Shown here one piece after another: positions 38,833 to 61,872 of a stretch of DNA of 64,000 bases. The DNA comes from Diadema antillarum (lineage: Eukaryota). The stretch covers positions 1,798,001 to 1,862,000 of the forward strand of contig NW_027270907.1 of NCBI RefSeq assembly GCF_040938485.1, written 5' to 3'. The position numbers were made by a program, and so were the translations under genes. How positions within the stretch are numbered: the first letter of the stretch is position 1; every line of letters begins with the position of its first letter. Under the pieces are notes generated by a model. That model saw only the letters and a list, made by a program, of their open reading frames with translations, did not search any database and was not told the origin of the DNA.

Positions 38833-40459
38833 ATGGGAGTCAGTTCAGAATTTGATGCCGTCTACGACATCCTTGATTCGCGTCAGAGAGGATTCATTGA
38901 GTATGAAGAAGTCCTGGAGTTTTACCTTGAATTCTACTTCATGCCAGTAGCAAGAGACCAAGTAAGAAGTTATAAATTTAGTGAAATAAGAGATCGAATA
39001 CCAGTGTCCACATACATACACTATGACTCCACATTACAGACTTATGCTTCTCCACCTTACATTGTGATACCAAAGACACATTCTGTTCTTATTATCAAAA
39101 TAACTTGACAACAACTTGAGACATGGGTTATTAGTCATGATGATCGTGCCCAAAATAGATGAAATCCTTTTGTGTTACATAAAGTGGTTACTTGCTGATC
39201 ACTCACTAATGAATAATGATTGTTCCACATTGGCAGAACAAGAATTGCATTCGATTTTCGGAATTGTGGTGCTAAGCACCGTTATATTCTGCTTAGCATT
39301 TGTTAAATGGAAGAAATATCAGTCTCTGTCACAATTAGAGAATCAAGCTTTTAAATCAGCGATTTTCAGATTTCCTTTTCATTTCTACCCAAAAATTACT
39401 GGGTTTCATGACTCCTTAAGTCTCAACTAGCAATGACAATTATTTTTTATTCAGGTGTCAGAAGCCATTAAACATGTTTGCGGAAAGGAAGCGAATGGAA
39501 GATGCCAGAAAGCGCAATTTCTGGATCTAGTTGTGGAATTGGAGCGCAGACGCCAGATTGAGCATGGAACATGGTGGGATTTTAAAGGCTTAGATACAAA
39601 GGTAAGATTTTATCATATTGAAAACCTTTGTAAGAGCAAATCTTAAAGGTTATGCTTATTCATTTTACAATTTCTGTTATACTTTTATACCTTAGTGTAG
39701 CTTGCACTTGAAGAGCACTAAAAAGATAATACAGTGCTATATGATGACAAATTGTATGATGTCATAATCATTTGTCTGTTTACATGTTTGAGACATTTTT
39801 GCTGTTTGAACTATTTAAGTATAAAGTGTAACAAGTTTGCTTTGTGCCTTTCCAAAACTCAGTGCTCAATATGATTTCATCATGTGTTTTTAGGCGTCAG
39901 CTCAGTTAACACAAATTGATTCTGTCACTGATGTCGTGATTTTTACAATTTTCATCTTGATTTAAGGATGCAGACAGGATTTCGACAAAAGATGCCCTGT
40001 TCCTGATGAAAGCCACACACCAGGAGCACTTCACCTTTGCCACTTGGCAGGGTTTCCTGGAGTCCCGAGCCCATCCTAATGAGGACGTCAGCTATTCTGA
40101 GATTCGGTTGTGGCTCTGTAACTGGCCACTACCAGGGACTAGCTGGAGCTATGAGGAGATCATTACTACAGCAGACATGCTGGACAAGGAGAAAAAGAAG
40201 CAGGACATGCACAGACGCAGAAAGGTCATGAATCTCCAGGTACTGCATTTTACATTAATTACTCTTAGCCTGTGACGACAGCTTTCGTGCAAATATTCGT
40301 CCTTCAGCTCTCCTTGCTTTGTTGCTTCTGAAATCAGTCCTGGTATCTTGAAATATCAGTGAAATTATTTCAGGCATTGCTTAGTTTGCCTGATGATCCA
40401 CTTAAAAAAAAAATCTTCAGAGCTTAGGTACAAATGTATCTAATTTATTTTATTCTCTT

Positions 40460-40511
<52 letters not shown>

Positions 40512-43500
40512 TCACTCTCTTCCTCCCTGTCTTTTTAATACCATAATGACTACTGATATGATGTCCCCAGCAATGATTTAAATGCTCTGTAGCAGTATTT
40601 TTGCAGTTCCACTGAGCCAAAGGCTTATCATGACTATTGTTTGGTGCTTTATTAAAGGGCCAGAAGCTTGTTACATCAAATTTTGTAATACTCCTCGGAA
40701 TTATTCACAAATTGAGCCAAGGTTATGTAATGTGTATCCACCTAGGTAGATGGTTATGAATGGTCCAAGGGGAAGCCAGCAGTTTAGAGTATTTCGTAGT
40801 ACTTCATATGTGGTCAATTTGTTTGATGTTACCCACAAAATGACTGTCCTAATAAGGACAGTCACTGTGAATCTCTTGATGAAACAGATTGGCAAAGCAG
40901 AACGAACTTGAACTGTGATTTATCACCAACTGGATAACACTCATCACAGCGACCACTGTCATAACCTTGAATTCATGGTCCAGTTTCAAGCAATAGTAGA
41001 TGGAATAGAGTAAACAGCATTCTATCAGCAAACAGAGGTTACTTTTAAAACACACTCAATACTAAAGAAAGATATCATAATGCATTTTCCATCATTCTCT
41101 TTGAAAGCAGAATGTACTTGATCTGAATTTTGACAAATGCATGCCACATTCCTTCATTACATTGAGTATTACTGATTTGTAGACCCAATGTTCCAAAAAC
41201 ACCACCTTGCTTCACATATTTCTTGAACTTGATGGTATCAACAGCACTATGTACGGTGCATTACGTTCATTGCAGAAGTGCACTTACATCCCAGATAGTA
41301 ATACAATGTAGTATACAAATGATGCACAGATCTGAGTGTATTAGTATACAAATATCGACTGCTACAGAGGGAGATGGTAAAACTATTTGCACCGAGGTGA
41401 CTTCTCAACAGTGCTATGTCCCGAGACGAAGTCGAGGGACATGGCACTGTTGAGAAATCACCGAGGTCAAATAGTTTTACCATGGCCCGAAAGAAAGCAG
41501 TCAATATTTGTTTTATATCCCTCTCGAGCATTTTACAAGAGTGATGACAAGGTTCCCTTTTGGAAAAATGTGCAGGTTTAACGTTAAATCGAACGTTAGA
41601 CCGTGGCAGTGCAGCAGCAGTGCGTGCAGTGCGTAGCGAACGACACCACTGCATGCGCTGTATAGGCCACCGTGTATTAAACCGTTGTTGGTTCCTACGC
41701 ACAAGCTACACTACAGCGTGCTAAACTCCGAACGATCAAGGAGGTCCAGGACTAGAAGTAGGCCTAAAGCAGCTTCGTTGCCCATATCATCTTCAAAATC
41801 GGTTTTAGTTTATTCCTAATTCGTACCTGATATGTTGTCCTTCTCCTGCAATCATTCCTCCGTTACTTGAAGCAGTCACTTTGTCAATTGAGCTGAACTG
41901 CATTGATCATACTAATGTTACACACACACACACACACCATCGCACCACAGATTTCTGTAATGCCATCGCGCACCGCACTCTAGCGCTAGCTCGCTACAAG
42001 CCACAGGACTGTCGCTAGCTAAAGTATCGCTACTACGCGCACTGCGTACATTCTCAAGTGAGAAATGTAGATATCGATCACACAATCACGATTGGGTGCA
42101 GATCGTGGATTCCCAAAAGTACTATATCACGCTGGCTAGTAACTCTTTCCACCGCATCCAGCTGCTCATAGCTAGCTAGTAAAACTACACCATTTTCGTG
42201 CTCCGTATAATCCTATGGCAAGAAACTTTACATGAGGGATATAATATGAATTGTTTGCACAAGATAACTGTGGCATTGCTCAACCCACTCGTCTGTGTCT
42301 CACGGGTTAAGACCAGTTTCCGTATGCACACACTATTCATACTGACGTACAAAGAAGCATATACATTATCTGTTTTGTAGAGCAGTGACCAATTTTTTTC
42401 CAAACCTCCATTTTTTTTAAAAATCATGCTTCTAGTAATAACCAAAGCATGGCAAAACTATCAGGTGTAATGCTAGCCATCTTGCTTGGTGACCTATTGC
42501 AGTGAGCTAACTGCTTATTAGCGTGTTTACAGTGGCTATCATCAATGATTGTAATAATCGCTTGATATTAAACTTCTGGCCAGTAAAAATCAACACACAG
42601 CTCTCGACCAATGAGATTGCACATTGCCTTACACTGTTCCATGATAATTGTTGACAATATTGTAATTTATATTTCATCCGTAATTTTGCCAGGATGATTT
42701 CATCTCGGCAATAGAAGCCCAAGAGAAGCAGCAGTACAGCAATAGATTCAGGAATGAGGCGAGGAGAAAACTCAACAGGTAAGGCTAACTGTGCATTCAC
42801 TTCCTTCACATAAGTTTTAAGTGAAAGGTAATCAGCCCACTATTGTAGTAATGAATCATATGTGTTATGAGGAGATATTCCATGCATTTTTAGATTGAAG
42901 ATATACTACTCTTGTCTAAAATTACAATATTGAGTGAGTCATGTTTTCAATAGAAATTGACCAGGAAGTCATGGAACTTGTAATTTGTAATATATAAGTC
43001 AAACTTATATACCGGTACTGTATGATGCCACTGAACCTTTAATACTTTTCCCTGATTTTTAGGATGCTGCAGAGCTGCAATGAACAAATTTATTTACATT
43101 CAGTACATGGATGTATATGTATGGCAAGCTGTGTATGATTTTCTACCTTGCATTTGTTTGAAAACACAGTGATTATCATTGCCTTATATGTGATAAATTT
43201 CACCTGTAGTAGTGATAGTTATTACCATGAACATATCTCTTTGTCATCGTAAAAGATGTAGGACATATCGATTTAATTGCTTTAAAGGTTGACTTGCTTG
43301 AACTTGATGAAGTGACAAATTGATTGATTTGCTTTTAAGAATGGATGTGCAGAAAGAAACTACATTGTGCAATCATTTGATAGAATATAGTCCTACATGT
43401 ATACTCCTACATGCACAAAGAACATGGCCATATTGGAATAAAGATACTTTGCAAAAAAAAAGAAAAAAATATGATGATCATAAGTAGATGACATCAAATA

Positions 43501-46500
43501 AACTTCAGCGTTTGGAATCCCTCATAGTTTTAATTGCATCATATTGTTTGTGATATTTCAGTCATGCCACCAGAGTTCTGTAGTTGCCTTTTTACACAGT
43601 AATTTGCACACATTATCCTGTAGTAATTTCTTGTGGGCATATATGCACTGACTTGCAATTGATGTGATTGATTTTTTACATATGACTTTCATGTTTAGTC
43701 AAATTTGATTAAACAAATGAAATATATCTGTTGGCTGATGTAGGTGGGTGCAACTTGGGGTTGAATCTCTCCTGTTTGATGACGGCTATGATGCCTTTGA
43801 AGGAGATGGCACAAAGCGAAATACTGTCACAGTACAGGATCTTATGGAGGCCATGGAAGAGAAGTATGACATCCTGAGAGAGAAGCTGCTCTGGGAATCC
43901 ACACAGAAGCATGTCGGTAAGTAGCAGTTTTCACCACCAGAGGCATGCCCCTACTTTCATGCTTAGCATGACACATTTTCTATTTCATGATTTTATGTCA
44001 TGGAATAAGATGAGAACAGAAAACCAAGCAGCAATGTAGACATAACTCTTTTCATGCTAAGTAATTATATAATAAAAGCATGTTTCATTTTCTGTTTTTG
44101 TGTTGTTGTTGTTGTTTAGTTGTTGCTTTTTTGTCTGTAGTATCAACAGAAATTCAGCTACAAGGAACATTCTCTCTAGAAATAATACCAGGTCATTTTG
44201 CGTTTGTGGTCCGAGTGTACATTGTTCAATATGAGCAAGATGAAGAGGTGAAAATTATTGTCAAAGGCAATCCATTACATATCAATTGGTTCAAACATTG
44301 GCAAAGCTGTCATAAAATAAGTAAACTTGCGTACACAACTCTTTCTGTTTTTTGTTTTTCTTCTTCAGGTGATACTATCTGGTCCTCAATGCGTGAGAGC
44401 GAGCGTGAGGAACAGGTTTTGCGCGTCAAGACCAAAGAGACAGAATACCGCATCAAGGGTGACTTTGAGAAAGTCACCCAGCTGAGCGTCTCATACCAGG
44501 TTTATGACTTCACGCTGACATCTGTGATGGGTTATGACCGACTGGCACATCTCAAATACCTGAAGGAGTTGCAGGACAATGAGAAGAAATTGCAGGCAGA
44601 GGGGAAGTCAGAAGAGGAGCGCTACTTGGCATTTGCTGCTGAACACATGCAGAAAGTTCAAGGTAGATAGTTTGTAGCCTAAATAAATGATTCTATGACA
44701 GCTAAACTACCATATAATTGATCATGTTTTGAGAAATGTTGTTCACAAAGCATAGGTCAGATTTTGTCACAGTCAGGCATTTTAAGTACAAACATTTCTA
44801 AATCTCAGATTGTACTTCTCAAGGTTTCTAGACCAATTGCAGAATCATGCAGTCATTAATGTTTACTTGTGTAATTTAAGTTTTTCTGGAGAATGGGGGC
44901 AGCAAAAAAACAAAAAAACAAAACAAAAGTAAGTCAAACCTCATGTAATTATGAGTCTGTGATAACTGGAATTGAAATATCTAAGTTTTGTGACTAGGAT
45001 GATGTATTTATTTTGTGTGTGAAACCCCTTTTTATGCCTCTTCCCGTATTAATTTGGTTATTAGATGGTATGAACTTTAGAATGCCTGCAAAGTCCCTTT
45101 ATCATGCATTTTTGTTGTCATTTAGCAAAATAACTGATAGTGTCTGATTGTCTGATTCAATTAAAGTTCACAATGTGAACATACAGTTAAGACAAAACTG
45201 ATTGTAAACAAAATCTCGTTCTCTCTGTATCTGTAGGCAGAGCCACAGCTGGCCAGCTTCTGATTGACCTGCACAAAAGACACATGTCTGAAAAGGACTT
45301 TGTCCTCTCCTTGTTGAAGGGCAGCCAGGGTAGACCTCTCTTTGCTGCAGAGATGGTGACTGAGTATGTCTACTATGTCAGCCAGCAGCTCATTGCAAGC
45401 TGGGAGCCCTCTCAGCTGGAATACTCAGCAATGGCCATGGGCATCTCTGAGCGGACACAGGATATCAAAATGTCCTGGTCAGTGGGAAATCTTTGCTCGC
45501 AGTAGATAACATGAACATTATGAATCTTAGTTTTGGATTTAACTCAAAAACATTTGATTAATTACATGTATTTTCATGTTTAATCTTTAATTACCTTCAT
45601 TGTCGTGTTTAATTCTTAATTCCCATCACTGTTATGTTTAATGATCAATTATTTCTATTCGTAATCAATTTTCAAACAGAAGAGTCAATGAAGATACATA
45701 TGCATACTGTTTTGCAACTTTATTGATAACTGCATCACCTGAATGTGGTGGGAAACTGATGAGTGGTTTATTAAATGCCATCTCAAGAAAGGAGTGCAGT
45801 CAAACAGGAGTATATTGGATCGATGTGTGAGTTAAAAGTGTGAAAAGTAAAAGTACTCTTGTATCCTCTTGTGCATGCAGTTATGATTATGATCGTGATC
45901 TGCATGAGCTGCTAGCTTTAGAGCGTCTTCACAAGGCCCCAATGGGGACCTTCCCAGACAAGCCGTCAGGAGAACACCCACCCATGGAAGGCCGCAGTCG
46001 TGGGATTGTAGACATCCAAGTTCAGGTCATGCGTGCTGTACTCCGTAAACACATCCACGAAAGACAGGTGAGCATTGGTGGATGTTGTCGTTTTAATTAC
46101 TTTGTACCCTGCTTCACTTTCTCGTGCTCATTCTAGTAAATCTGCCCATGACTGCGTAAATTTAATAAAGTCAGTATGTCGTAGAGCAGTAAGGAATATG
46201 AAGTTGTCCAAACTTCGCCTTGAGTTGCATTCCACAGCGTAGCTGGGTTGATATCTAGGTTTCATAGAATATTTACATTTGACGCAAGGATTGTATGAAG
46301 CCAGGATTGTATGAAGCCAGAAACACCCACAGTGTCAAGACAAGAGTTGATATGACACACTGCCTTATGCTCTCTGTAGATGATGGTGTACATGCTTCAA
46401 GGCAAGGAGAGCAAGGCCTGGCGAGCAGTAGCCCGCAGGAGGACCACTAGGGAAGGGAGAGAGGAGAGAATCAATGAGCTGAGAGCCCAGTGCTCCAACT

Positions 46501-49500
46501 GGCGCCAGTCTTCGGCAGACTTCATGCGTGCAAAGCAGAAGGCACACATCAAAATGCTGCTTGAAGGCACCTGGCTCTACCATGAGAATAGGTAAGAACC
46601 TTAGAGTCTGAAAAAGCTCTTTCAAACTGTTTTATTGAAGTCTGTCAGTCAGGTGATAACCACATTGGTCTGACATAGAGTAGGCTAAACACTATTATTT
46701 TCTGTACTCCTATTTCTATGACATGCATTATACTCAGAAACAGTGTTATCATGGTATTGAAAGAAAACAAAAAGCCTGTCATTGGCTGGGTAGGCCCATA
46801 GTCCTTTTCCTTCAGCAGAAATTCAAATTTGCTACCATGCCCACCAATGATAGAAGATATAAATATGAGGGACGGAAAACTTCCCTTCGAATAATTTCCC
46901 GTGTTTGAAACTGATATTAGAGTAGGGACTTTTGCATACATGTCAGAGAGAAGGAAACCATGCAAGCATAAAGCTTAGAAAAGAATTTGTTTTTTGCTAG
47001 TGTGGTTACTTTTCTACTTCACTCATGCTGCTATTGATTAGAAGTGTCAAAAGCATTGTAAGAGTAAAATCTCAGTCCTCTTTCTCCTATCCCAATGAAG
47101 ATGCTTGTAGTGCATACACAAGTACATACTGCTTGTTCATGCATGTTCAGTTTGTTACTTAATGACATCTCATGTCGTTTTGTGTGTCTTTTGAAAGTAA
47201 AGGAATACACATCCAGTTTTGCTGATGGACCATCCTTTCCAGGGAAATGATGATATCAATGAATTGCTATCTGTTTTTTCCAGTTGAAGGATAAGATGCT
47301 GGAAGTAATCTGCTTGCACTTTCACTTCCTTCTATCTTTCCTCATATGTATGATAAAGGCAACTAGACATCAGAGGAGGCCACAACCTCAGCCTGACCCA
47401 GGTTTCTGCTCATGTGTTGGCTGACATCCAGCAGCATCACACCAAGGAGTTGGAGCGCATCCTTCTTGAGATGCAGCACAAGGTTTGAAAGATCCTTACT
47501 CATCAGGAGTTTCTCTGCCCGCTGTGCTCTGACATTTTTCTACCTTTGAAAAAAAAAAGCCTTTGTTTTAGATGTCTATATGATATAGCAGCGATAAAAT
47601 CATGATGATGGTGACGACGATGATGATAATGATGATAATCATAATTATAATGACTGTCCTATTCACCAAGGATAGCAGGTTGGCACTGATCTAGCTAGTT
47701 CCAGAAATTATACACCAGTAGAGTTAAATTTCTGTTGCATGCCATTGGCATAGTGGAACAGACATTGGGGAACTTACACTGTTTGAAAAAAAAGAGTAAA
47801 AAATGGAAAGTCCATAGTTTTTGATGTACCGTTTATACTGCCAGAAAATTAGAATTATTCCTTTTTTTAGGCTTCTTAGGCAAGAAGTGTGCATGCGCAG
47901 AAAAACTGGTATATATTAGTTTTCTAGGTAGATGGTGTGCATGTGCAACTTGTATCTGTCTTTGCATGAAGGCCACTGATCTGTTTGATTCTTACATGGA
48001 GATCAGTGCTGTAGGCAGGCAGGCAGGAAATCTCACATGCCAAGGATGGATGTCACATGACCAAACATTGGAATAAAACTCAAGAGCTAGGTGTCGGTGT
48101 TTACGTTGGCACAAAAAAAAAAAAAAAAAACTGAATAAAACTGCCAATTTCAATAAATTCACTCCTGAGGAAGGCTTTTCAATTGCTTCATTTCGCTTAC
48201 GCACCAGTAGATGCCTAGCAACATCCAACAAAATACTGGAATGTGTAGAAAACTATATATATATATACTTTTTTTTTTTGGTGACAGTGTAAATGCCCAT
48301 GATCATGATCTGATGAGTGTTAGATCTAGATCCACCCTGTTTCCTGCCTGGTTGCTTCTTTTTTTTGTCTGTGAAAAATATTTCACAATATTTTATTGTG
48401 AAATAAAATTGTGTATTCTATATATTGCTTGTACCTCATGTGCAGGATGTAAAAGAGCTGATGTCCATCTGGTGGAGGGAGTACAGTGCACTGAATGAGG
48501 AATGGCTGGATGGGATCTCTGCTGTCATCCTAGGAACTTTTGAACTCACCCTGGAGGAACTCGAGATAGTAGCTGCCCTAGAAGCAAAATATGATGTCCT
48601 TAGGTAAACACGTAATTATCAAGTCATAGAGGATTAGTAGATTTTCTCTCTCTTCTTTCTTTCTATAAAACAACAACAACAGGATTAGTAGTCTCTTGAG
48701 AGAACTTTAATACAACCAAGGGAAATTACCTACACAGATCCATACTTTAAATATACAATTTACGAGCCAAGTCGTAGGCATAATAGCATATCAATTATTT
48801 TCAATATTTGTTTGGGGACTATAAAATGTATATAAGAATGGAATTGAAAGTAAACAGTGAAACAGTGCAACGTTTACCTTGAAATTCCAGTATTTTGAAG
48901 CATGATATCAGTATAGTGTCTCCAAATTTCAATGGGTAAATACAGTATGATAAGTCAGGATTTTGAATGGTTAAATAAAAACTCACAGTGTTTGGCAAGT
49001 CACAAACATAAACTACTTATTCATTTGGTCTGTCATATATGCAGCATGTTTTATTGTGAAGCAGGAATGAGCAATGCAAACTCATATCTCTTGCCTGTCA
49101 TATTTCCAGGGACAAGCTCTTGACAGATGCCCTTCTGAAGCAGTTTGGAGAGGCTGAGTGGAGGAAGATGACTGAAGGAGATCGCCAACGCCACATCCTG
49201 AAGTTGAAGCTTGAGGAGCGGCGTCTCAGGCAGGAGGGCAAGTTTGACCAGGCAGCAAAGCTTTTGGGAGACAGTATCAAGGTATGTTCAACTTTTCCAA
49301 GTTATCATGTTTGGATGATAAAGCCATGATTAGAAATTCTTTCATTATTTCAGTGATACTATAAGTTAGCCGTGCAGTGTATCAAACATGAGCAGTCTCA
49401 CAGTGATTACTTGTCATTGATATTTGCATGACTGGAATGGTGATCACAACTGATGTTGTTTGTGTTTTTTTTTTTTTCCACATGGTTGATGTCATTATAT

Positions 49501-52500
49501 AACCATCTTCATAGATGTTGGTATAACTAAGGGCGTCATATTTTGGAACAGCATTGCTGTACATATTCATGAAAATTCAAGAATTTCATTTATTTACGTC
49601 GATATAGGGCAATTGTCAATCAGTTGCAATAGCATTGCTGTTTCTGATTTGCTAGGGAGATTCTACAGTATTGGTAATATTTCTCTTTAATCAAGTATAA
49701 AGGACACATTTACGAAATTATCATGTTCTTGAGAAAACATAGTCACCACCAGCAGTGATGATAGTTAAAAGTTATCTTGGTACAAAGGTGTGAGAATGAT
49801 CAGTACATATGAAGATTGCTGGAGAATTGTATTGCTGAGCAGTATGCTCTCTATGTGTGTTTGCTATAGGACAAGGAAGCACTGGAGAAATTGATGGGCA
49901 CCAATCGAGAGGAGTTCCAGAGGAAGCTACAACAGAGGCTTCTCATGAGGGAAAAGCGTAAAGCCCAGGGCCTTGAATCTGATGAAGAGAGTGATTCAGG
50001 TATACAGTACTCCAGTTATAACAAACATGGTTATTACAGTGTTCTTGTTACAACGAAGTAGAAATTTAGGTCCCAAAATTATCATCAATGTGTCTTTATT
50101 TAATTCACTGTTCGGCTATAATGAAATTTTGGTATGACGAAAGAAAAATGCTGGTCCCAAGGACTTCATTGTAACGGCAGTCACCTGTGCTTCAAGACTT
50201 TTCATTGAATATTTTCATTGTCCCTTTCTGTACTAAGACAGCTCTCTGTACTGCATTCTTCTGTCATAAAGAGCACTAGCTCTCAAGCAATCTCATATCA
50301 ACAAAACACTAGAGGACAACTGCAATTTCTAGCTACATGTAAGTGAAATGAATCAAGTGCAATTTTGCACTCAAGTGAAGTACAGCAGTAGTATTGTAAT
50401 AGCAGTGACTGTCTTTTGCTTCAAATTGAACTTCTGATTGAAGAAAAATCTGATATACTCACTTCTGGCAGAAATCCAAGAGAGTGAGACAACCACAGGC
50501 AACATCCTGAAGGACCTCCAGAAGAGGCAGGATGAAGAGCTCAATGCCATCATGATGTTGCTACGGCAACAGCAGAACCAGTACCTCAGTGAGAGAGAGA
50601 GGCAGGAGTTACTGCTAAGGCTAAAGAGGGAGCGCCGACGTGCAGCCAAGGAGAACAACTTTGACGAGGCAGCCATCTTGCTTGGATTGGCGGAAAGGAA
50701 CAAAGCCAACATGGAGGAAAAGTACGCAAATTGGTAGAAGTCTGAGCTTGCAGCAATACTACTATTACTTTGCCGCACTGTCATGTGTCAATACCATTCA
50801 GCTTCCATAATCTTCCACTTTTTGAGTTGTGATTTTTTTTCCCTTTCAAAATACAAACATATTCATGCAAACTTTTGTGAAGAATTATGTAAGTAGTACG
50901 TGGAGTCATTTTGATATTCATATTGTATTTTTGAGTGTTTTTCATCACTTTACTCCTTCAATTAACCATTTGGTATTCAGAGGAGATAGAACATCACTGT
51001 ATAAATTCCAACCACAATTTGATTGTAGATTGAAGGCAGAGAGAGAACGTCAACTCAAACTTGCCAGAGAACGGCTTGCAGCAAGGAAAAACAAGTCTGA
51101 GCAGATTGTGGATGACTTTGATGAGCCAAACTTACCACCCAAAGGTATGTCATCCAAAGTAATTTGTGGGATTTTTTATTTCAATACTTGGGACACTTAC
51201 TGAATACCAGAGACCACATGTAGCATTCACTTCACGTATATATGGTAGAAGCACTTAAGTTTGGTGAGTACGGCTCTCGAGTTGTAAACAGAAGATAATC
51301 ATGATTTAAAGTTCTGCCCAGTGCGTAATCTGTGGATATTTGTTTCACCCACAACGTCATGGCTGTCCCAAATTTACAAATGGGTACCAGGTAACATAAT
51401 GATAATTACAGGATCCTGTTGAAGAGACTACCCAGGGAAACAATATATTCATTATCTTTAACAGATGTCCTGGCATATTTTACTTGCCCCTATAACGAAT
51501 TGAACAGTTAGACCTGTCAATGCTTTAGCGTCAGATAATTGCATTGATGATTAGGTTTAAATAAGCAAGAACTTTGGCTTGCAGGGCATTACACTTTAAC
51601 CCTGTACTGTCCCCCCAGGTGACCTTGAGGCCTGGCGGGATGCAGTCCTGCGAGAGATGGATCGCAGGCACCGGGCGGAGCAGGAGCTTCTGGTGAACAT
51701 CATCATGGATGAGGGCAGTGAGGATGTGAGAGATGCAGCCAGAAAGATGGGCAAAGAGGGCAGGCAGGAAAGACTCCTTCACCTCAGGTCCAAGGCAGAG
51801 GGACTCAACCTTGAAAAGAAAGGTACAGTGACTGTAGTAAGATGGAGAGACTCAAACAGGATTTGTTGCCCCATTTTATAGTGTAATGGTTTAATCTGAC
51901 TATATTTATGAACTTTTGTCAGTACACTCAACTGTAGAAATCAGTAGAAACTGTAGAAGCAAGACTATTTTTAGTGAAAAAAGAAAGATAGGATATTTCT
52001 GAAAAAGAGAAAAAAAAATCATATTTGTAATCAACCTACAGTCTTGTACACATTACAAAGTCAGTGTAGAATAAATACTATCAGTGAAATTTAAAAGTTT
52101 TGGGGAAATTGAAAAACTGTTGTGAAGGGTTTGATAAGAGTAAATTATGCGTCATTTTCTTGTGCTGTGAGAGGTAAAATCCCATTTGTAAATATCTAAG
52201 GAAGGACTGGTGGTGTTTTGGAGCTGCAGTCATTGACTGTGACATTATTTGATGTACATGTAAGAAATATTGTGTAAGTGATAATGACTGCATTTGTAGT
52301 AGGTAATGCTAGGATTGAAAGTGAAGACAGAAGTCTTGCATGTATTTATTCTACTGTATATGTTTATTTATCTTTTAAACTCCTTGGGTAATGTGAAGTT
52401 GTGGACAACTATAAAACTCTCTTTCAGAGGAAAAAGAAGAGAATCGTGACATCTTGGAGGAGGCAGGAGCCATAAAGAGTATCCTCCGTCATAGAACCTT

Positions 52501-55500
52501 ACAGGAACAGCTGACAGAAGGGGAAGTTGAGCAGGAGGAGGTGACTGCTACACTCTTAGCAGACCTACAGGAAGAACAGGAGAGGGAGTGTGAGGTTGTC
52601 ATGGCAACCATCTTCACAATGGTAAGACAGATGGGACATGTGTATCTACTGTATACGCCAATTAGCGGGTCTATTTTTTTGCGAGAAGGGACTTCCCAAC
52701 AATTTTGCAAATGGTTAAATTCACGATTGTGGAGCACAACACTGAATGGAGAAATATATGCATGCACGTCACATTCATGTCGGGATCATAGTTGATATTT
52801 TTGTGTGTTTTTAAATTCATGAAGAGCGCCCAACTCTCGAAATTCTCTGAAATATAAACCTAGCGAAATATTCTGCGTACACAGTTATTCAAAACTGTCA
52901 GTGAAGATTTAAATAAGTCATTGTTCTTTTCGATATTTGCCTTTGCAGCATCACACAGAATGCTGTTGTTTCAAATGAAGAGTACCAGTAGTTGTAAATC
53001 TAAGCTACTAGCATAGGTAATTGAGATGAATCCTGTGTACTTCTTTGTGTAGTACATGAAAGACAATTACAACTTACTCCATTGAATGTACTGGGTGTCA
53101 ATGGGCTGCTTTCATCTTCCATGCTAATCGCGCTGTGAGGTGACTTATGTTGAACAAATGGAAGGAATGTCTCATGCATTGTGCATTGTGCATTTTGCAT
53201 GAGAAGATATTATGTTCAGGACCTTGGCTTTGGGAAGCCTTTTATCAGGCAAGTAGAAGTATGAACTATATCTTAGTTAGTGCATCAGTCTTCATTTCTT
53301 TTTTTTTCAAAATGCTTGGTGACAACTTGTCCCTCATTCAAATTATCATCCATTTGACGGAATGTGCTTGTGACAATTTTGTCCTTCAAACTGCTTATGG
53401 ATTTAAAAGGAAAAATAGTGTCACCCTGCAAATCTATGATGAGCACTGTATATGCAAATTCAGTTCAGTTTGGTATTGTCTGGTGTTTGCACTTACCTTG
53501 TGGTACGGTTAAGATTTGAGGCTCATCAAAATGTGATAGACTTTTATTTGGTGAATTCTTTGCCATTTTCATCAATAATTAGATTTTAGTAAAACATATA
53601 GGATTAATCCAGCACTATGTTTCTTGATTTAGGTGTCATAAAAAATGCCGTATTAGACATTCAAACTTCACAACTATACTCTCCCAGTCATTCGGTCATG
53701 ATTATCATTAAACTACTACCAGACAGTGTACTTATTTCAGTGCTCTCAGAGATGGTTACGACAATGTCGAAGTGTACAGTGATAATATTGTAATGATCTG
53801 ATTGTGCTGGGTGATTCTACTCCCTTCGTTCATGGATCTAGGGGGATATATGTTTCAAATAATTGAATGCTATAACATAACAAAAATGCTTGATTTTACT
53901 TTCGAGCAAACATGCAAAGATGAAGACAAACATCTTAAAATTGGTCTGAAGTTCATCAAATTGCTTTGATAATTGAAGGAAAGGGGGTAATGCATTACAC
54001 AAAATTGGAGGATATGATCCAAGAAAGCTCTCTTGTGTAGCTTTAAGAAGATTACAGTTTTTTCAAATTTTTATTACAAGAAATGGAACTAGCTAATAAT
54101 CAGAGTGCCCAACAACTGACAACTTAATAACTAGAAAGTGAGAAGCTGAACTTGAATCTCTGTGGTTGTGTCTGGAATGACCAAAATATGTCTGTGCTTG
54201 TTTTTTTTTTCACCTTGCCAGACTGAGGAGCAACTGTCTCGTCTGCGCATGGATCAGATCTGGGCTCGCCACAATGAGCAGGGACGCAATGTGTTGACAA
54301 TCTTCACACAGTATGAGGGTGTTGGTGATGAAGACAGCTTATTACAGGTGAGGAATTGTTGAATACAAATGAGTGCTTTTCTTGTCATTTAGAATAACTG
54401 TTTCTTTCTCTGCCAGTTTATTATGTAGCATAACCCTGCTGATAGTTGCTCTGAATTTAATATCAGCAGATAAAAGAAGCTATTGAGCAAATCCAAATGT
54501 TAAATTTCAGTGCTGAAATTGCAGTAAGCTCATAATGGTATTATTGTTCAAGAGCATTGTTCTCATAATAGGGAACACAGTTGTGATTTAATTGTCCCCG
54601 CCGAACGAGTTCGAGCAGGGGACTATGAAACGTGTGTGTGTCCATGTGTCCGTCTGTGTGTCCGTCCGTCCATCCGTGTGTGCGTCCGTGTGTGATCAAA
54701 ATGTTCAAAATGCTACTCCTTTGCCATTTCTAACCCGATTTTGATTCTGTTTGCTTTATATGATAGCACTACATGGGAGCTTTGAAACTTCTATACAGAA
54801 TTTCAGTTGTGACCTTTGACCTTGACCTTTGACCTATATTGTACATTTTGCTTCAAAATGCTACTCCTTCGCCATTTCTAACCCAATTTTGATTCTGTTT
54901 GCTTTATATGATGGCACTAGGTGAGGGCTTCAAAACTTCTACACAGAATTTTGACCTTTGACTTCTTTGACCTTTGACCTTTATTTTTGACCTATACTGT
55001 ACATTGCCTACAAAATGCTACTCCTTCGCCATTTCTAACCCGATTTTGATTCCGTTTGCTTGATGTGATGGCACTAGGTGAGGGCTTCAAAACTTCTACA
55101 CAGAATTTTGACCTTTGACTTCTTTGACCTTTGACCTTGATTTTTGACCTATATTGTACATTTTGCTACAAAATGCTACTCCTTCGCCATTTGTAACCCG
55201 ATTTCAATTCCGTTTGCTTTAAGTGATGGCACTAGGTGAGGGCTTCAAAACTTCTACACAGAATTTTGACCTTTGACTTCTTTGACCTTTGACCTTGATT
55301 TTTTTTACCTGTATTGTACATTTTGCTACAAAATGCTACTCCTTCGCCATTTCTAACCCGATTTCGATTCCGTTTGCTTTATGTGATGGCACTAGGTGAG
55401 GGCTTCAAAACTTCTACATAGAATTTTGACCTTTGACTTCTTTGACCTTTGACCTTAATTTTTTTACCTATATTGTACATTGGCTACAAAATGCCACTCC

Positions 55501-58500
55501 TTCGCCATTTCTAACCCGATTTCGATTCCGTTTGCTTTATGTGATGGCACTAGGTGAGGGCTTCAAAACTTCTACATAGAATTTTGACCTTTGACTTCTT
55601 TGACCTTTGACCTTAATTTTTTTACCTATATTGTACATTGGCTACAAAATGCCACTCCTTCGCCATTTCTAACCCGATTTCGATTCCGTTTGCTTTATGT
55701 GATGGCACTAGGTGAGGGCTTCAAAACTTCTACATAGAATTTTGACCTTTGACTTCGTTGACCTTTGACCTTCATCTTTTTACCTATATTGTATATTTTG
55801 CTGCTAAATGCTACTTCCGGCGGGGACATATATTACGCACCGCGTAATTTCTACTTTTCCTTGTTGAGATATGCTAATATTTGAAGAAAAAAAAATGTCA
55901 TAACAACTGTTGAACAAGGTGGAAGTGAAATGGCTAAGTCAGCCATGCATTAGATGTACATTGATCGCTAAACATGTTTAATTATGCCTTATATTTTATA
56001 GGCCCTTGACAAGAAGTATGACACCCTGAGACAGAAGCTGCTGAAGGAGGCTCTCATCAAGAAGGTTGGTGAAGAGAAGTGGGAGACAATGTCTGAAGAG
56101 GAGAAACATACCATGCTTCTGGACCTCAAACAGCAGGAGAGAAGGCTGCGGGCTGAAGGTGACTTGCTTTCAAATGCTTAACGGAAGAACAAATGATATA
56201 TGTTTGTAGTTCAGTTGATAGTTGTATGATCTTACATATGAGAAAATTTCCCTAAATATTCCTAATTTTTGAGGGGAAATGCCTGCTGAAGACCATGAAC
56301 AAGTAACAAGTTTTTGAGTTTTAAACAGATTTATTGTGTGTTCATTGTTTTGTATGTTTACAATGTAGTATTGAAAAACAGATGTGATGGTGTGTGTTTC
56401 ATGTAGTCATAATTTTTTTCTCTGTATGAATGACAATAATTGACTTTTGACGTACCGTTATGTTCTTTTTATTAGCAATGAGGCCAAAATTGAATTGAAT
56501 TTGCTGGAATTCAGAAAGGGTAGATAAAAGCAGCTGTAGCTGCAGTGATATTTATATACTCACACAGCAGAAGTTGCTTTCTCACAAAAGTTGGCCGTAG
56601 ACCGTGTTTTACAATCCTATACTCATGGCTTATTCATAAAAAAAAACACACACACCAGAACATATGACTGACAACCATGACCTCTTCAACAGGCAAAACC
56701 TCTGAGATTTCTGAGTTACTTCAGATTGAGGTGGCATCAGATGATCTCAAGAAGTTGATGGGTTCAGAGAGGGACCGCTACGAAGAGAAACGAAGGCAGA
56801 AAATGGAACTGAGAAAGAAGAGAGTATCACAAGGTAAATGGCACATATTGTATCAATGTCCATGATAAATTTACTTTTTTTAAACTGGTTTATGCAGACA
56901 AATGCATTACCATTTCAAACAATATCTGCATGTAATAGTGTCATCCACGTTATTTTGTGTGCTTGCTTTAGTAATGCTTCAATTACTAAAATTTGACTCA
57001 TTCTAATTGATCATATTAAAGGTCTGTTCTAAATGTAGTTGAGATTTTGTGATTTGAATTGCAGAAATATTCATGTGAGATTTGACTATTTGAGCAAATG
57101 TTTGATTATTGGGGTCCTTGTGCCAGTGCAGTGTTTATCATGGAAACATCAAGCTGTCTTCTTGATCCCCCTCACTTTCACTTCACTTCAATTCAATTCA
57201 ATTTTTATTCAGCCATTCAGTAAAAACATACGTATACACTTGCAAACAAAAATATGCGTGTAATTATTTCAGAAAGTGTAAATATATAAAAAGACATTGA
57301 AAGGTCATGGACCCCTGTGAAAGCACGGCTTGTATTGATTGTGCCCAGTAACAAAATCTTATTCTGACACAAATCAAACTTCACATTAAACTTTCCAGGC
57401 CTTGATCCAATTCAAGAGGGTGAGGAGGATGGCATCTCAGAAGATGAAGAGGAGACAGAGGATGATGTTCTCACTCAGATCCAGAAGCGCTATGATGCAG
57501 AGCGGGAAGCCCTCATTGCCCAGCTTAGGGGTGTTGATGCACAGTACCTCAATGAGCGGGAGAGGCAGGCAGCACTGGCCCGCCTTAAGAGGGAGGTACG
57601 GAAGGCCAGGAGAGAGGATGGATTCCATGCGGCTGCCCTGGTCCTTGGCCTGGCAGAGCGACATCAGGCCGCTTTGGATGAGAGGTAATATACCAGTCTT
57701 TACCAACCAACTTTGTACTCTTCTTCATCTTTTACTATAAACTAATGCAAAACATGAGAGTCGGTGTACTGTGTGCTGGAGAAGAGTTATCAGCATTTCA
57801 TTTGTTTGTTTCAAACAACTTTATATTCATATTTACATCTTTACTCATCTTATATAAGTACAGTATCTGAATATTGATGTGTCATGTGGCGATAGCACAT
57901 ATACACAATCTCCGTACTCAGCATTATTTTTTAGACAAAAGGATGACCACAGCATTACTCCAATCAAATTTTATTCCAGAGTATTCACAATTATTCTAGG
58001 TTTTATGCCAACCTGATTTCAAGGCAGGGTATCACAGTAGTAATTCATATACACCTCAGCAACATGAGAATAGAGTAATGTTTGTGCAACACAAACTTTG
58101 TGCCCAGATTACAGCGGGATCGGCTACGCCAAGAGCAGTTGGCCAAGGAACGGCTTGAGGCAGCAAGGAGAAGACAGAAGCTAGGAACTATTGAAGAGGA
58201 GCAGGATGAAGAGCTACATGTTGTTGATGTGGCAGACAAAGGTGCCATGCAGGTGAGATTTCATAAGATCACGCCCTATGTTTGGTCATCTCCTCGCGAT
58301 TGAATCCAGAGAAACTCTATACATGTACTGATCTCATTATGTCTTACTTTAGTCATGACGAGTTGTTTAATTGTTGACAGATGTCTTAAAAAGGAAGATT
58401 TAGACTGAGAATTTAGATCGAGGGTATTCCAAATAAGCAGAATTTCAATCATGTTCATGGCCTTGGACAGGTTTGTATTCCATGCATATTGCTTTGAGCT

Positions 58501-61500
58501 ACCAGTAGAAATGTGTTGATGTATTGTACCTCAACTCACTTGTATGCACAGCTACTCTTTCTAGTGCTATTTCTCATTAGAGTGATTCTACTAGCAAAAT
58601 AGTTTGTTGTGTTGGTGGACTAAAGATGTATTTCAGAAGTGTTCTGATGCATGTATACCTGCTCATATGCATACCAGTTTGGAAACAGGTACAAATATAC
58701 CCAATATGATGTAGACTGCTTTAAACAAATTGTGGTACAGTGTAGAGGAGTTCACATTTATGATGGTTTCTTGCACCCAGGGGACAAATTTTCCTTTCAA
58801 TTATGAGGAGTTTTCATTAAGTGTAGTCTGTGCTGAAGGTTCCCTCCTGATAATGTTCTGTACACCAGGATGCGGTCCTCAAGATGCTAGAGAGGAAACA
58901 TGAGAGAGAGAGAGTGGTTCTCCTTCAGCTCCTCCAACATGGTGGCAGTGAGGAGGAGAGGTTCATCGCTGGAAACATGTCAGCTGAGGCACGTGCTGAG
59001 AGACTTCAAGACATCTGGAACCAGATCAAGCAGCTACAACTCAGTGAGTCTATACATCACAATGTCCTTGTGAAAAGCCTTATAATGTTATTCATTCCTC
59101 TTCAGTAATACCTTGTAATCTGATTTGATTCTTTCTCATGAGTTTAGAAAGAATATGTCATATCCTCCTTTTTTAATACCTAATGCAAGATTGGCCTTGA
59201 TAGCTTTGTTCAAACACAAGTCTTGTTCAATATTCGGGCTTTTTTTTTTATAGTGGATTTGGCTTTATTTGCGATGCTTTTTTGACACAAATTAGTGATA
59301 TTCTCTCTCTCTCTATTCTAATCATTTCCCATGTACACAGGTCAAAAGGAAGAGAGAGCTACGTTACTGCAGGAGGCAGCTGTTGTTAAGATGGTCTCAC
59401 GATCCAAACTCCTGGAATCCAGTCGGGAGGGAGAAGTGACAGAAGATGAAGTGATCATTTCCATCATGGCTGACTTACAGCTACAGCAGGACAAGGAGTG
59501 TGAAGCCATCATCCATTCTCTACCAGACAAAGTAAGACATTCTTGAAAACAAGACTGGTGTGGGTATGGCTCTGTTGATGGCTGGTTGCTAACATCTGAT
59601 TCCTTTGTTTCAAGTTATTGAAGTACAGTCTGACCTCTGTTATCTGGCCATGTTGGGACCAGTGCCCATCCGGATATAAGTGATTTGGCTGGATATGGGG
59701 GAGATAATGATTATGCACATGTACTTGTAGTTGTTGATCCAGTGGTAGCTAAGTAGATAGCGTACACTGCAGCAGTGGTGTAATCTATGCTAGCTAATTA
59801 AAGAATAACAGAAATTGAAGCATTTTAATGTAGAATTCGTTGCATGTATCTGTTCAGAATATTATGGGTTAATCATGTGAGATTTGTAGGAATTTTGATA
59901 GAGTTTGAAATCTTTTTTTTTCCATCTTCACTGCCTGTAGAGGATAGAGAAGTCCAGATAAGAGATGGCTGGATAATAGAGGGCAGACTGTAAGCCACTT
60001 ATAGCGAGGCTGATGAAAGCAAAAAGTACAATGACATTGTCATGGTTTTATTCATAGACCACTGTACACAGGAGAGTTGTTTGCATATCTAACAATGAAG
60101 CGTAACTCTGTAAACCTTTCTGACTAGAAGAAAATTATTGTCAACTGTCTCAGACATGTATTTATACTAAACATCTTTCCATTACCAAGCAAAGGTAAGG
60201 CCATGCTAATCATATGAGGACGGGGAGCAAAGAACTCTGCATATCTTGAGACTTAGTACTGTATGTATTACCGGTACTTCATTTCTGACATACATTGGCA
60301 GATGTCACAGCTGTTTCATCCATTCAAGGATATGTTAAGCCTATTACAACATCTCTGAACTGGGAGCAACTCTTGTGGTGAAAAAAAAAAGAAATTATGC
60401 AGAAATATGATATACATTTTGAACAAAACAGGCTTAGAGAAGATACAGTTTGTCATGTTTGGTAGGAAGTGAGATACTGAGTGTACAGTTTTAGCCAAGC
60501 AGTGACAAGTGTTTCACATATTGTGATTATTTTTGTGTCTCTTCTAACTGCCCTCATCATGAAAGGATCATGGTGCCCTTACCAAGCTGCAGACTGAGAA
60601 CCAAGAGGCAATCAAGAATGAGAAGAATGAGAATGTGACCATTGTGGTGACCAGTACTGACCTTACCACTAAGGCTGGAGAGAACCAGCTGATAGAGGCA
60701 CTGGAGGCCAAGTATGATGCCCTCAAGGACAAACTACTTGCTGATGCCCTCATGAAGCAGGTCAGGATTCCCCCGTGTTACTACCAAATTAACCTGTTGA
60801 GGATGGACTGATTTTGCGACAACACGCATTTTCCATAGGCACTTGCCTGAGTATACTCGGGACTCGTCCTCAACGGTTTAAGACATAGAGAATAGATTCC
60901 AGTCTCGTAATTTTTTTTTTTCAAAGGAACGTATGTTAGCTGGTATATACAAAAAAGGGAAAAAATGAAAGTATGTCTTTAAGAATTTTTTAAAGCAAAT
61001 TTTGTCCTTTGTCTGTCATCTCACATACATCATATACAAATGAATTTTCTCAGATTTCGGTCTCTAGTTAAAGGCTTGAAGTACATAAGCAGTACTGGTT
61101 TATGGACACAAAATATGAAGTACCTTCTTCAGAAGGGGTAGTGTTGATAAGCTCCAAACATTGATCATCTTTTGTGCTGACTCTCTGTTGTAAAAGGCAA
61201 GCTAGTGCTATTGCAAACACTGGAGTGAGAAAGATATGACATGAACTCAGATTTACTGTGTATAATGGGAGTTCATGCTATGTTATCTTTAAATTTTGTC
61301 CATGTTTATAGCGATTACATCCCATCTTCAGTCCCCTAGTATTCCAACAGTTCCTGTCATTCGATGTAATGTTTATGTGGTGATGTCAGAAAGGTTCTAT
61401 CTGTGTTTCTATCTGTCTCAGTGTTTTTGCATTATATCTATTGCATGTTTTCAATATGTCTGAGATCCAGAACAGCAGTCTTTGCATCTTTAGCTGCATT

Positions 61501-61872
61501 AACCCATTAAAGACGAGTCCCAAGACTACTCGGGCAAATTTCAAATGTGACAATTTTTAATGCAAACTGTGTGCCTCTGCACTGCATTCCCTGTAAACTG
61601 TCATTGCTTCTTTACTCGTCTTTGATGCCTGTAGCTTGGAGAGGGAGAATGGGCACAGCTATCAGAGAGGGAACGCCAGCTACGCCTCATGAAGCTGAAG
61701 ATGGAAGAACGCCGGCTGCGGCAAGAGGGCAAGTTTGATGAGGCAGCCATGCTGCTGGGTGATGCTGCCAAGTCCCAGCAAGCCCTGGAGTCCCTAATGG
61801 GGGAGTCCAAGAAGGCTCAAGAGGAGAGACTGAGACTAAGACTAGCAAGACGCAAGCAGAGGCTGGCTGAAG
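38833..61872 (+). CDS. Large uncharacterised protein with degenerate N-terminal EF-hands and ~410-aa helical/coiled-coil repeats (trichohyalin-like composition); 3' end beyond the window
   Basis: 26 GT-AG coding exons join in frame without stops (4,744 nt, 1,581 codons): 38833-38961, 39455-39601, 39967-40239, 42693-42778, 43744-43916, 44369-44662, 45237-45477, 45881-46067, 46380-46591, 47359-47482, 48446-48603, 49110-49281, 49870-49999, 50472-50721, 51029-51144, 51619-51822, 52428-52621, 54222-54347, 56002-56158, 56693-56833, 57399-57684, 58108-58252, 58869-59043, 59341-59531, 60566-60760, 61635-61872. Good Kozak context (AAGATGG) and an in-frame upstream stop. EF-like loops DSRQRGFIEYEE and DTKDADRISTKD. 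Confidence 0.9.
40460..40522. repeat. (CT)n microsatellite
   Basis: Directly visible. Confidence 0.9.
41348..41511. mobile_element. Palindromic ~165-bp MITE
   Basis: ACAAATATCGACTGCT / AGCAGTCAATATTTGT outer arms; ATGGTAAAACTATTTG..TCTCAACAGTGCTATGTCCC / GGGACATGGCACTGTTGAGA..CAAATAGTTTTACCAT inner arms. Confidence 0.82.
50003..50188. mobile_element. Degenerate Tc1/pogo-type MITE abutting a splice donor
   Basis: TACAGTACTCCAGTTATAAC ... GTAACGGCAGTCACCTGT; begins at intron position +4. Confidence 0.55.
54590..55853 (+). mobile_element. Helentron/DINE-1-like non-autonomous element with internal ~158-bp tandem array (7 units)
   Basis: Subterminal inverted TGTCCCCGCC (54593) / GGCGGGGACA (55819). 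A (GTCC/GTGT)n microsatellite follows the 5' end, and a 3' hairpin ATTACGC-ACC-GCGTAAT lies at 55832-55848. Unit starts AAAATGC at 54707, 54855, 55012, 55170, 55330, 55488, 55646 and ~55805. Confidence 0.8.
59624..59992. mobile_element. Tc1/pogo-type MITE
   Basis: TACAGTCTGACCTCTGTTATC ... GATAATAGAGGGCAGACTGTA. Confidence 0.78.
60789..60881. mobile_element. Mini piggyBac-like MITE
   Basis: TTAA-CCTGTTGAGGA ... TCCTCAACGGT-TTAA; a related terminus fragment TTAACCCATTAAAGACGAGTCCC lies at ~61499. Confidence 0.6.

What the first reader, a model, noticed from the sequence alone, without database searches (positions are those of the whole stretch)
43744..61872. Unnamed ~410-aa helical module repeated at least four times in a giant EF-hand protein
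The signature A[LM]E.KYD.L..KLL..AL.K..G...W..[ML].E.ER...L.KLK..ERRLR.EG recurs in exons at ~43850, ~48580/49110, 56002 and ~60690/61635, with periods of 418, 407 and 409 aa from my exon assembly. Each unit has nested sub-repeats (KLEERRLRQEGKFDQAAKLLG vs KRERRRAAKENNFDEAAILLG). I cannot assign a known domain or gene name. Automated pipelines would likely call it trichohyalin-like. A conserved Trp/Gly-punctuated helical repeat behind EF-hands suggests a calcium-responsive scaffold or filament protein (inference).
Basis: partly seen in the sequence, partly recalled or inferred. Interest (0 to 1): 0.7.

Follow-up and report, generated by a model that had tools for sequence, protein, structure and literature searches.

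The report
Five-unit helical repeat, giant EF-hand protein
The repeat is real: this sea-urchin gene encodes a roughly 2,900-residue protein made of five ~410-residue helical units behind a calmodulin-like head. The same layout is kept from placozoans to chordates, yet it has no Pfam family, no matching solved fold and no paper about it.

Summary
Observation confirmed, to the residue. The window is Diadema antillarum (contig C19). The + strand gene starts at 38833 and runs past the window end.

- **Identity.** It is co-linear with RefSeq XP_071495122.1 (P0178, 2,898 aa, "uncharacterized protein"). That model is encoded by a 92-100% identical second copy 574 kb away, most likely the other haplotype.
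- **Repeat.** The ALExKYDxL signature sits at P0178 residues 250, 668, 1075, 1484 and 1900. The periods are 418, 407, 409 and 416 aa. Four copies lie in the window and a fifth beyond it.
- **Sub-modules.** Each unit holds four ~100-aa sub-modules. The first two are clearly homologous (hhalign 95%, E 3e-8).
- **Conservation.** The five units sit at the same residues in Trichoplax, cnidarians, echinoderms, hemichordates, a brachiopod and an annelid, and they cluster by position, not species.
- **No known relative.** There was no Pfam hit, no PDB sequence hit and no fold match for a confident AlphaFold model (pLDDT 84, pTM 0.80). No paper was found.
- **Head.** The N-terminus has a calmodulin/centrin-like four-EF-hand fold, but none of its four loops is canonical in Diadema. 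A calcium response is therefore unsupported.

Best reading (inferred): a fixed-length modular helical scaffold. No vertebrate, arthropod or nematode member was found. Interest is moderate.

The parts
38833..40239 (+). Exons 1-3 (aa 1-183): N-terminal calmodulin/centrin-like four-EF-hand domain. Its calcium loops are degenerate in Diadema.
   Evidence: Exon map. AlphaFold model pLDDT 84.2. Foldseek against calmodulin, centrin and troponin C: E about 1e-4, probability 1.00, about 140 columns. Pfam EF-hand_7 scores 18.4 bits, below the 30-bit cut-off. Loops examined.
42693..43837 (+). Exon 4 and the start of exon 5 (aa 184-243): end of one long predicted helix (residues 154-216) and a low-confidence linker, joining the EF-hand head to unit 1.
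43838..48562 (+). Unit 1 (aa 244-661), exons 5-11. This is the most divergent unit. Signature at 43850.
   Evidence: Sub-module profile hits: S1 244-346, S2 374-466, S3 489-584, S4 591-655. Exon map. Signature.
48563..54338 (+). Unit 2 (aa 662-1069), exons 11-18. The signature is split by an intron (48581-48603 and 49110-49281). The S2 sub-module is exon 14 (50472-50721).
54339..60685 (+). Unit 3 (aa 1070-1477), last three codons of exon 18 plus exons 19-25. The signature lies in one exon (56002-56158). The S2 sub-module is exon 21 (57399-57684).
60686..61872 (+). First ~105 residues of unit 4 (aa 1478-1582), exons 25-26. Signature at 60698-60760 and 61635-61872. The rest of unit 4, all of unit 5 and the C-terminal tail lie beyond the window; the next exon is at window-equivalent 68072.

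Best explanation
**What it is (shown).** The region encodes units 1-3 and the start of unit 4 of a five-unit repeat of about 410 aa. The protein is about 2,900 aa. I saw no N-terminal signal-like stretch, so I take it to be cytoplasmic; this is an inference, and no signal-peptide or membrane-span predictor was run.

- The gene has at least 45 exons and spans more than 65 kb of Diadema antillarum DNA.
- Each unit is all-alpha and consists of four ~100-aa sub-modules (S1-S4). S1 and S2 are clearly homologous. S3 and S4 are only weakly related to them.
- In front sit a calmodulin-like four-EF-hand head and a long helix (residues 154-216). Behind is a ~530-aa charged tail with two more degenerate S2-like stretches.
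- The gene is single-copy per haplotype. The five-unit layout dates from before the split of placozoans, cnidarians and bilaterians.

**How it probably works (inferred).** It is a fixed-length modular scaffold built of packed helical bundles, not a single long coiled coil.
- The five units are not interchangeable. Each has been kept as its own ortholog, which suggests each holds its own partners, or that total length matters, as for a ruler or spacer.
- In Diadema the EF-hand head is more likely a docking or peptide-binding module than a calcium sensor.
- The cell type and structure it serves are unknown.
For: - **Repeat and exon register:**
- **Exon map and exact periods:**
- **Sub-modules:**
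- **Same five units at the same residues in ten species, from Trichoplax to Diadema:**. Hydra, Magallana and Branchiostoma were each missing one or two sub-module hits.
- **Units cluster by position:** SH-aLRT support is u1 100, u4 97, u5 99, u2 79. Four label changes are needed, the minimum possible, against 24.8 for shuffled labels.
- **Orthologs of 2,500-2,900 aa** in Placozoa, Cnidaria, Echinodermata, Hemichordata, Cephalochordata, Tunicata, Mollusca, Annelida, Nemertea and Brachiopoda.
- **Unit model:** pLDDT 83.8, pTM 0.80, 18 helices of 5-29 residues.
- **The sub-module occurs nowhere else** in the 1.75 Gb assembly except the two copies of this gene.
- **Full-length intronless 8.9 kb contig** encoding a 2,817-aa ortholog in a public run. 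I read this as a transcript.
- **Head fold and loops:**
Against: - No expression, localisation or interaction data exist for any member; no RNA run was listed for this stretch.
- The scaffold or ruler role is inferred only from architecture and conservation.
- The AlphaFold model is of the Antedon unit 3, about 50% identical to the window's unit. It is a single unit with a 25-row alignment, so how units pack against each other is unknown.
- EF3 is canonical-like in 4 of 16 species, so calcium binding may survive in part of the family.
- Absence from vertebrates and ecdysozoans rests on searches with limited reach.
Confidence: 0.6

Rival explanations
1. A calcium-responsive scaffold or filament. 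The EF-hand head senses calcium and switches the assembly or partner binding of the helical rod.
For: The N-terminus has a calmodulin/centrin-like fold. EF-hand_7 passes the Pfam cut-off in Acanthaster and Lingula. EF3 has canonical-like ligand residues in Lingula, Branchiostoma, Trichoplax and Owenia, and EF1 in Antedon.
Against: In Diadema, EF1 reads DSRQRGFIEYEE and EF3 reads DTKDADRISTKD, with basic or neutral residues at ligand positions 3 and 5. EF2 starts with G and EF4 with an invariant R. EF2 and EF4 are non-canonical in all 16 species. The short packed helices argue against a filament-forming coiled coil.
Confidence: 0.2
2. A structural protein of motile cilia, basal bodies or rootlets in ciliated epithelia and larvae of marine invertebrates. 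This is a more specific version of the scaffold reading.
For: Members were found in lineages that I know to have ciliated epithelia or ciliated larvae (Trichoplax, cnidarians, echinoderms, hemichordates, amphioxus, tunicates, molluscs, annelids, nemerteans, brachiopods). None was found in arthropods or nematodes. A coral larval proteome lists a 'trichohyalin-like' protein, XP_027045087.1, as ciliary and depleted at metamorphosis (PMC12960093). A 'trichohyalin-like' transcript is enriched in Lytechinus secondary spines (PMC11574069).
Against: I could not show that either of those proteins belongs to this family. In the oyster atlas, the two 'trichohyalin' marker genes shown (of three mentions in its supplement) are other genes, LOC105346986 and LOC105338222, and this family's accessions are absent. 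Vertebrates have motile cilia yet no member was found. No axonemal cryo-EM chain matches the unit or sub-module profile.
Confidence: 0.15
3. An ordinary charged coiled-coil protein of the trichohyalin, golgin or plectin type, whose apparent repeat comes from E/R/K/Q-rich composition.
For: Sources name members trichohyalin-like, golgin subfamily A member-like or autophagy-related protein 11. The sequence is rich in E, R, K and Q.
Against: No S_100 or other Pfam family reported, including coiled-coil families, at E up to 0.01-1. Invariant W, G, Y and K positions recur with a fixed period. Units are orthologous by position across phyla. Helices are short and packed, pTM 0.80. The profile hits nothing else in the whole genome.
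Confidence: 0.04

Closest known systems
Trichohyalin (TCHH) and other S100-fused-type proteins
   Same: An EF-hand N-terminus followed by a very long, highly charged, E/R/Q-rich helical region. This is why pipelines transfer the name.
   Different: There is no S_100 Pfam match. The head here is a four-EF-hand calmodulin-like domain, not an S100 pair. The repeats are 410-aa and ~100-aa modules with conserved W/G/Y/K positions and packed short helices, not short low-complexity quasi-repeats. From my own knowledge, trichohyalin is a mammalian hair-follicle protein. This family was found only in invertebrates.
Giant helical-bundle rod proteins (spectrin, plakin, nesprin type)
   Same: Tandem ~100-aa all-helical modules forming a long modular scaffold. 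EF-hand domains occur in the same proteins, for example in alpha-spectrin and alpha-actinin (my own knowledge).
   Different: There is no Pfam spectrin hit. The only structural resemblance is Z 5.5 over 58 residues. The EF-hands here are N-terminal. The modules are grouped into a fixed five-by-four super-repeat.
Calmodulin / centrin / troponin C (four-EF-hand domains)
   Same: Residues 1 to about 145 are predicted to adopt the same two-lobed four-EF-hand fold (Foldseek probability 1.00, E about 1e-4, 16-20% identity).
   Different: The calcium ligand positions are degenerate. The domain is fused to a 2,700-aa helical body.

Membership tests
Trichohyalin / S100-fused-type proteins | N-terminal S100-type EF-hand pair (Pfam S_100) | tested here: not met
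   Pfam scans of P0178 and of the N-termini of six orthologs list EF-hand_7, EF-hand_6, EF-hand_1 and EF_EFCAB10_C, never S_100.
Trichohyalin / S100-fused-type proteins | Short low-complexity charged quasi-repeats forming a single long helix | tested here: not met
   The repeats are about 410 aa and about 100 aa long, with invariant W, G, Y and K columns. The model has 18 helices of 5-29 residues, pTM 0.80.
Trichohyalin-plectin-homology (TPH) domain proteins | Match to the Pfam TPH model | tested here: not met
   No such hit for exons, 25 single units or whole orthologs at E up to 0.01-1.
EF-hand (calmodulin-like) domain | Helix-loop-helix pairs with the calmodulin-like fold | tested here: met
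   AlphaFold pLDDT is above 90 over residues 11-170. Foldseek against calmodulin, centrin and troponin C gives probability 1.00. Pfam EF-hand_7 scores 35.5 and 36.5 bits in Acanthaster and Lingula against a cut-off of 30, but 18.4 bits in Diadema.
EF-hand (calmodulin-like) domain | Canonical 12-residue calcium loop (D at position 1, D/N/S at 3 and 5, E/D at 12) | tested here: not met
   Diadema: 0 of 4 loops. Across 16 species: EF1 1 of 16, EF2 0 of 16, EF3 4 of 16, EF4 0 of 16. Actual calcium binding cannot be tested with these tools.
Spectrin-repeat rod proteins | Three-helix-bundle repeats of about 106 aa that match the Pfam spectrin model or fold | tested here: not met
   No Pfam hit. The best structural row for spectrin is Z 5.5 over 58 residues, within the noise for helical models.
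Any solved structure or known fold for the 410-aa unit | Significant sequence or fold match | tested here: not met
   Profile against PDB sequences: 0 hits at E up to 1 for the unit, and only E 0.086 and 0.17 for the sub-module. Foldseek PDB best E 1.0, TM at most 0.14. VIA-align wide search best Z 7.0 over 78 residues. ESM Atlas by shape TM at most 0.27, by features no usable hit.

The most novel reading that the evidence does not exclude
The ~410-aa unit (four ~100-aa helical sub-modules) is a new domain family and possibly a new fold. It would define an ancient, single-copy metazoan 'ruler' protein whose five units have each been kept since before the placozoan-cnidarian-bilaterian split. 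That protein would serve a structure, perhaps of ciliated epithelia, that vertebrates and ecdysozoans lost or rebuilt with other parts.
Probability: 0.25. Interest if true: 0.65.

Novelty: new variant of a known kind. Interest (0 to 1): 0.45.

Why it matters
This is a large and strongly conserved animal protein about which nothing is known.

- It has orthologs of 2,500-2,900 aa, with the same five units at the same residues, in species that diverged more than half a billion years ago (date from my own knowledge).
- It has no Pfam domain beyond a weak EF-hand, no solved relative and no paper.
- Its database names ('trichohyalin-like', 'golgin-like', 'autophagy-related protein 11') are transfers based on composition and are misleading.

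Defining the unit as a family would correct those annotations. The rigid length and the unit-by-unit orthology suggest a precise structural job that can be tested in sea urchin, Nematostella, Ciona or amphioxus. The apparent loss in vertebrates and ecdysozoans would then point to what that job is.

Tried and rejected
- **Pfam on single exon peptides.** Only sub-threshold noise: TPR_11 E 0.12, ZMYND11_CC, S_4TM.
- **RNA evidence.** No sequencing run was listed for 55950-61949, so splicing and expression could not be checked and read laying was not used.
- **Papers by accession or locus tag.** 17 identifiers tried, none found.
- **'Trichohyalin' as a ciliated-cell marker in oyster.** The two marker genes shown in the supplement are LOC105346986 and LOC105338222, not this family.
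- **Coral and Lytechinus 'trichohyalin-like' records.** They could not be tied to this family.
- **ESM Atlas.** No usable hit by features, TM at most 0.27 by shape.
- **Further homology searches.** The full-length profile A4 and the unit profile A2 added no new lineage and no vertebrate.
- **Assembly-artefact reading of the repeat.** Rejected: units within one protein are only about 27-42% identical to each other, and each has its own ortholog in other phyla.
- **Exact-match exon mapping failed**. P0178 differs from the window by a few residues because it is encoded by the other copy. It was redone with tolerance.
- Exons were searched one by one by reference. After that the database protein P0178 and its orthologs stood in for the product, and junctions were checked only locally.
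Full report
**1. The observation**

The full pattern is at 43850 and 60698, and its E.KYD core is also at 48581. The copy at 56002 reads ALDKKYDTLRQKLL. The second motif, FDxAAxLLG, is at 49216, 50633 and 61707.

An all-against-all BLASTP of stop-to-stop peptides shows that whole series of exons recur in the same order:
- 49147-49281 against 61638-61772: 64% identity, E 2e-18.
- 50477-50722 against 57440-57685: 48%, E 2e-22.
- 52430-52627 against 59343-59537: 39%, E 3e-13.

After adding 40 kb downstream from the same contig, a fifth copy appears at window-equivalent 73.6 kb, and the gene continues beyond 104 kb. The repeat is real and far beyond chance.

**2. Which gene**

The window is G000:C19:1798001-1862000 of a 1.75 Gb assembly in 2,963 contigs. 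I searched a profile of one repeated exon (A1, four copies given by reference) against 1.84 billion representative proteins. It gave 228 hits, led by proteins of 2,500-2,750 aa with 11-18 matched stretches each. Their sources call them 'uncharacterized protein' or 'trichohyalin-like'.

A word-indexed search with the crinoid ortholog returned P0178. This is XP_071495122.1, 'uncharacterized protein [Diadema antillarum]', 2,898 aa. It lies on a contig of 2,862,786 bp, which is the length of C19.

P0178 is co-linear with the window at 95-100% identity per exon. It is encoded with 100% identity by a second copy at C19:2.41-2.46 Mb, whereas the window's copy is 98% identical in the exon tested.
- The two copies are 92.6-99.8% identical across five compared stretches of about 3.2 kb that include intron sequence, and their intron lengths differ.
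- The neighbouring DUF4504 gene is duplicated too.
- The published description of this assembly says the 1.75 Gb version retains both haplotypes: 84.4% duplicated BUSCOs and a haploid size of about 703 Mb (PMC13511894; preprint).

The second copy is therefore most likely the other allele. The window's copy is intact over the 45 exons mapped here (aa 1-2609).

Exons were searched singly by reference, and then P0178 and its orthologs were used.

**3. Anatomy**

Local GT-AG junction checks against P0178 give 45 exons up to residue 2609. The finding's limits, 43744 and 61872, are the start of exon 5 and the end of exon 26.

In P0178 the signature is at residues 250, 668, 1075, 1484 and 1900, so the periods are 418, 407, 409 and 416 aa.

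An alignment of 25 units from eight species (A2) has 39% mean column identity, with invariant K, W, E, A, L and Q columns. I cut the unit into four segments and searched their profiles back. Every unit of P0178 contains S1, S2, S3 and S4 in order, for example 1070-1171, 1194-1291, 1310-1402 and 1405-1468.
- S1 and S2 are homologous: hhalign 95%, E 3e-8, over 96 columns (alignment A5).
- S3 and S4 are only weakly related to them (15-69% probability).
- Two further degenerate S2-like stretches lie in the C-terminal tail.

In the whole genome, the sub-module profile hits only the two copies of this gene.

**4. Structure**

AlphaFold2 on the Antedon unit 3 with A2 as its alignment gives pLDDT 83.8 and pTM 0.80, with 18 helices of 5-29 residues and two disordered acidic linkers. 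This is a packed helical domain, not one long coiled coil.

No known fold turned up:
- Foldseek against the PDB: best E 1.0, TM at most 0.14.
- VIA-align against 48,161 chains: best Z 7.0 over 78 residues (helical hairpins of ribosomal protein L29, TRP-channel helices). This is below the tool's stated noise level for helical models.
- ESM Atlas by shape: TM at most 0.27.
- Profile searches of PDB sequences: nothing.
- Pfam: nothing for exons, units or whole proteins.

The claim is therefore 'no match found', not 'new fold shown'.

**5. The head**

Residues 1-250 of P0178, with 15 orthologs as the alignment (A3), give pLDDT 84.2. The model shows four helix-loop-helix motifs up to residue 143 and then a single helix from 154 to 216. 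Foldseek matches calmodulin, the SCaMC regulatory domain, troponin C and centrin at E about 1e-4, probability 1.00. Pfam EF-hand_7 scores 18.4 bits in Diadema (cut-off 30) but 35.5 and 36.5 bits in Acanthaster and Lingula.

The ligand positions are degenerate. In Diadema no loop is canonical. EF2 and EF4 are non-canonical in all 16 species. EF3 is canonical-like in four species and EF1 in one. The EF-hand fold is confirmed, but a calcium response in Diadema is not supported.

**6. Distribution and age**

Named members come from these groups:
- Placozoa: Trichoplax.
- Cnidaria: Nematostella, Stylophora, Pocillopora, Hydra, Clytia, Sanderia.
- Echinoderms of all five classes.
- Hemichordates, amphioxus and tunicates.
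- Molluscs, annelids, nemerteans and a brachiopod.

No named hit is from a vertebrate, arthropod or nematode. Two further profile searches added none. Given the limits of these searches, this is absence of evidence, not proof.

In ten species the five units start within about 40 residues of the same positions. In a maximum-likelihood tree of 40 units from eight species, the units group by position. SH-aLRT support is 100, 79, 97 and 99 for u1, u2, u4 and u5. Four label changes are needed, the minimum possible, against a shuffled mean of 24.8. I left Magallana and Branchiostoma out of the tree because not all of their unit starts were detected. The five-unit layout therefore predates the placozoan-cnidarian-bilaterian ancestor, and the units have not been homogenised since.

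An intronless 8,908-nt contig encoding a complete 2,817-aa ortholog is present in a public run. I read it as a full-length transcript.

**7. How it probably works**

Shown: the architecture, its conservation, the predicted helical packing, the EF-hand fold with degenerate loops, and the fact that the module is unique to one gene.

Inferred: a fixed-length modular scaffold in which each unit has its own conserved partners, or in which the total length is measured. The head would serve as a docking module.

The cellular setting is unknown. A ciliary role is a lead only. It rests on the taxa that keep the gene and on 'trichohyalin-like' entries in a coral larval proteome and a sea-urchin spine transcriptome, which I could not tie to this family. 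In an oyster atlas, the two 'trichohyalin' ciliated-cell marker genes shown in the supplement are other genes.

**8. Comparison and verdict**

This is not trichohyalin. It has no S100 head, no low-complexity quasi-repeats and a different taxonomic range. It is not a spectrin-repeat or TPH protein by any test run here.

It resembles giant helical-bundle rods in design. The gene model already exists in RefSeq. What is new is the recognition of the unit as an undescribed, ancient repeat family of fixed number.

The only note near it concerned the MANF intron upstream.

Interest is moderate: a real 'dark' pan-metazoan protein, but with no functional evidence yet.

Noticed in passing
G000:C19:2401880-2459788, compared with window 29881 to beyond 64000: The whole block (DUF4504 gene plus the giant gene) is present twice on contig C19, 574 kb apart. 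Across five compared stretches of about 3.2 kb that include introns, DNA identity is 92.6-99.8%, and intron lengths differ. The annotated protein XP_071495122.1 is encoded by the other copy. The published assembly paper says the 1.75 Gb version retains both haplotypes, so this is probably an uncollapsed allele placed in series, not a paralog.
   Followed up: partly
window 54706-55815: A tandem array with a 158-bp unit, about 6.4 copies at 94% match, lies inside the intron between exons 18 and 19. The spacing of two matched exons that flank this intron is 1,275 bp shorter in the second copy.
   Followed up: partly
window 62106-62492 and L011:3539-3925: About 390 bases are translated identically in all three forward frames twice, 5.4 kb apart, inside the long intron after exon 26. 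This is a repeated element or a local duplication. The intron is about 3.4 kb shorter in the second copy.
   Followed up: no
window 29881-30822 (-): An intronless ORF of 313 aa matches Pfam DUF4504 (E 1.4e-26, 93.9 bits, full length). It lies between MANF and the giant gene.
   Followed up: partly
window 24393-24617 (+): An ORF whose end (…[32 protein letters not shown]…) looks like the C-terminal SAP-like exon of MANF.
   Followed up: no
window 34845-35438 (-), 7317-7673 (+), 33862-34224 (+): ORF fragments that look like the C-terminal parts of retrotransposon (LINE-like) proteins. 7461-7667 and 33835-34047 are 33% identical at the protein level.
   Followed up: no
Strongylocentrotus purpuratus proteins P0245 and P0249: S. 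purpuratus RefSeq carries two series of models, 'trichohyalin' and 'trichohyalin-like', each with six isoforms. They fall in one cluster at 90% identity and lie on the same 62 Mb scaffold. This may be the same duplicate-allele problem or a real echinoid duplication.
   Followed up: no
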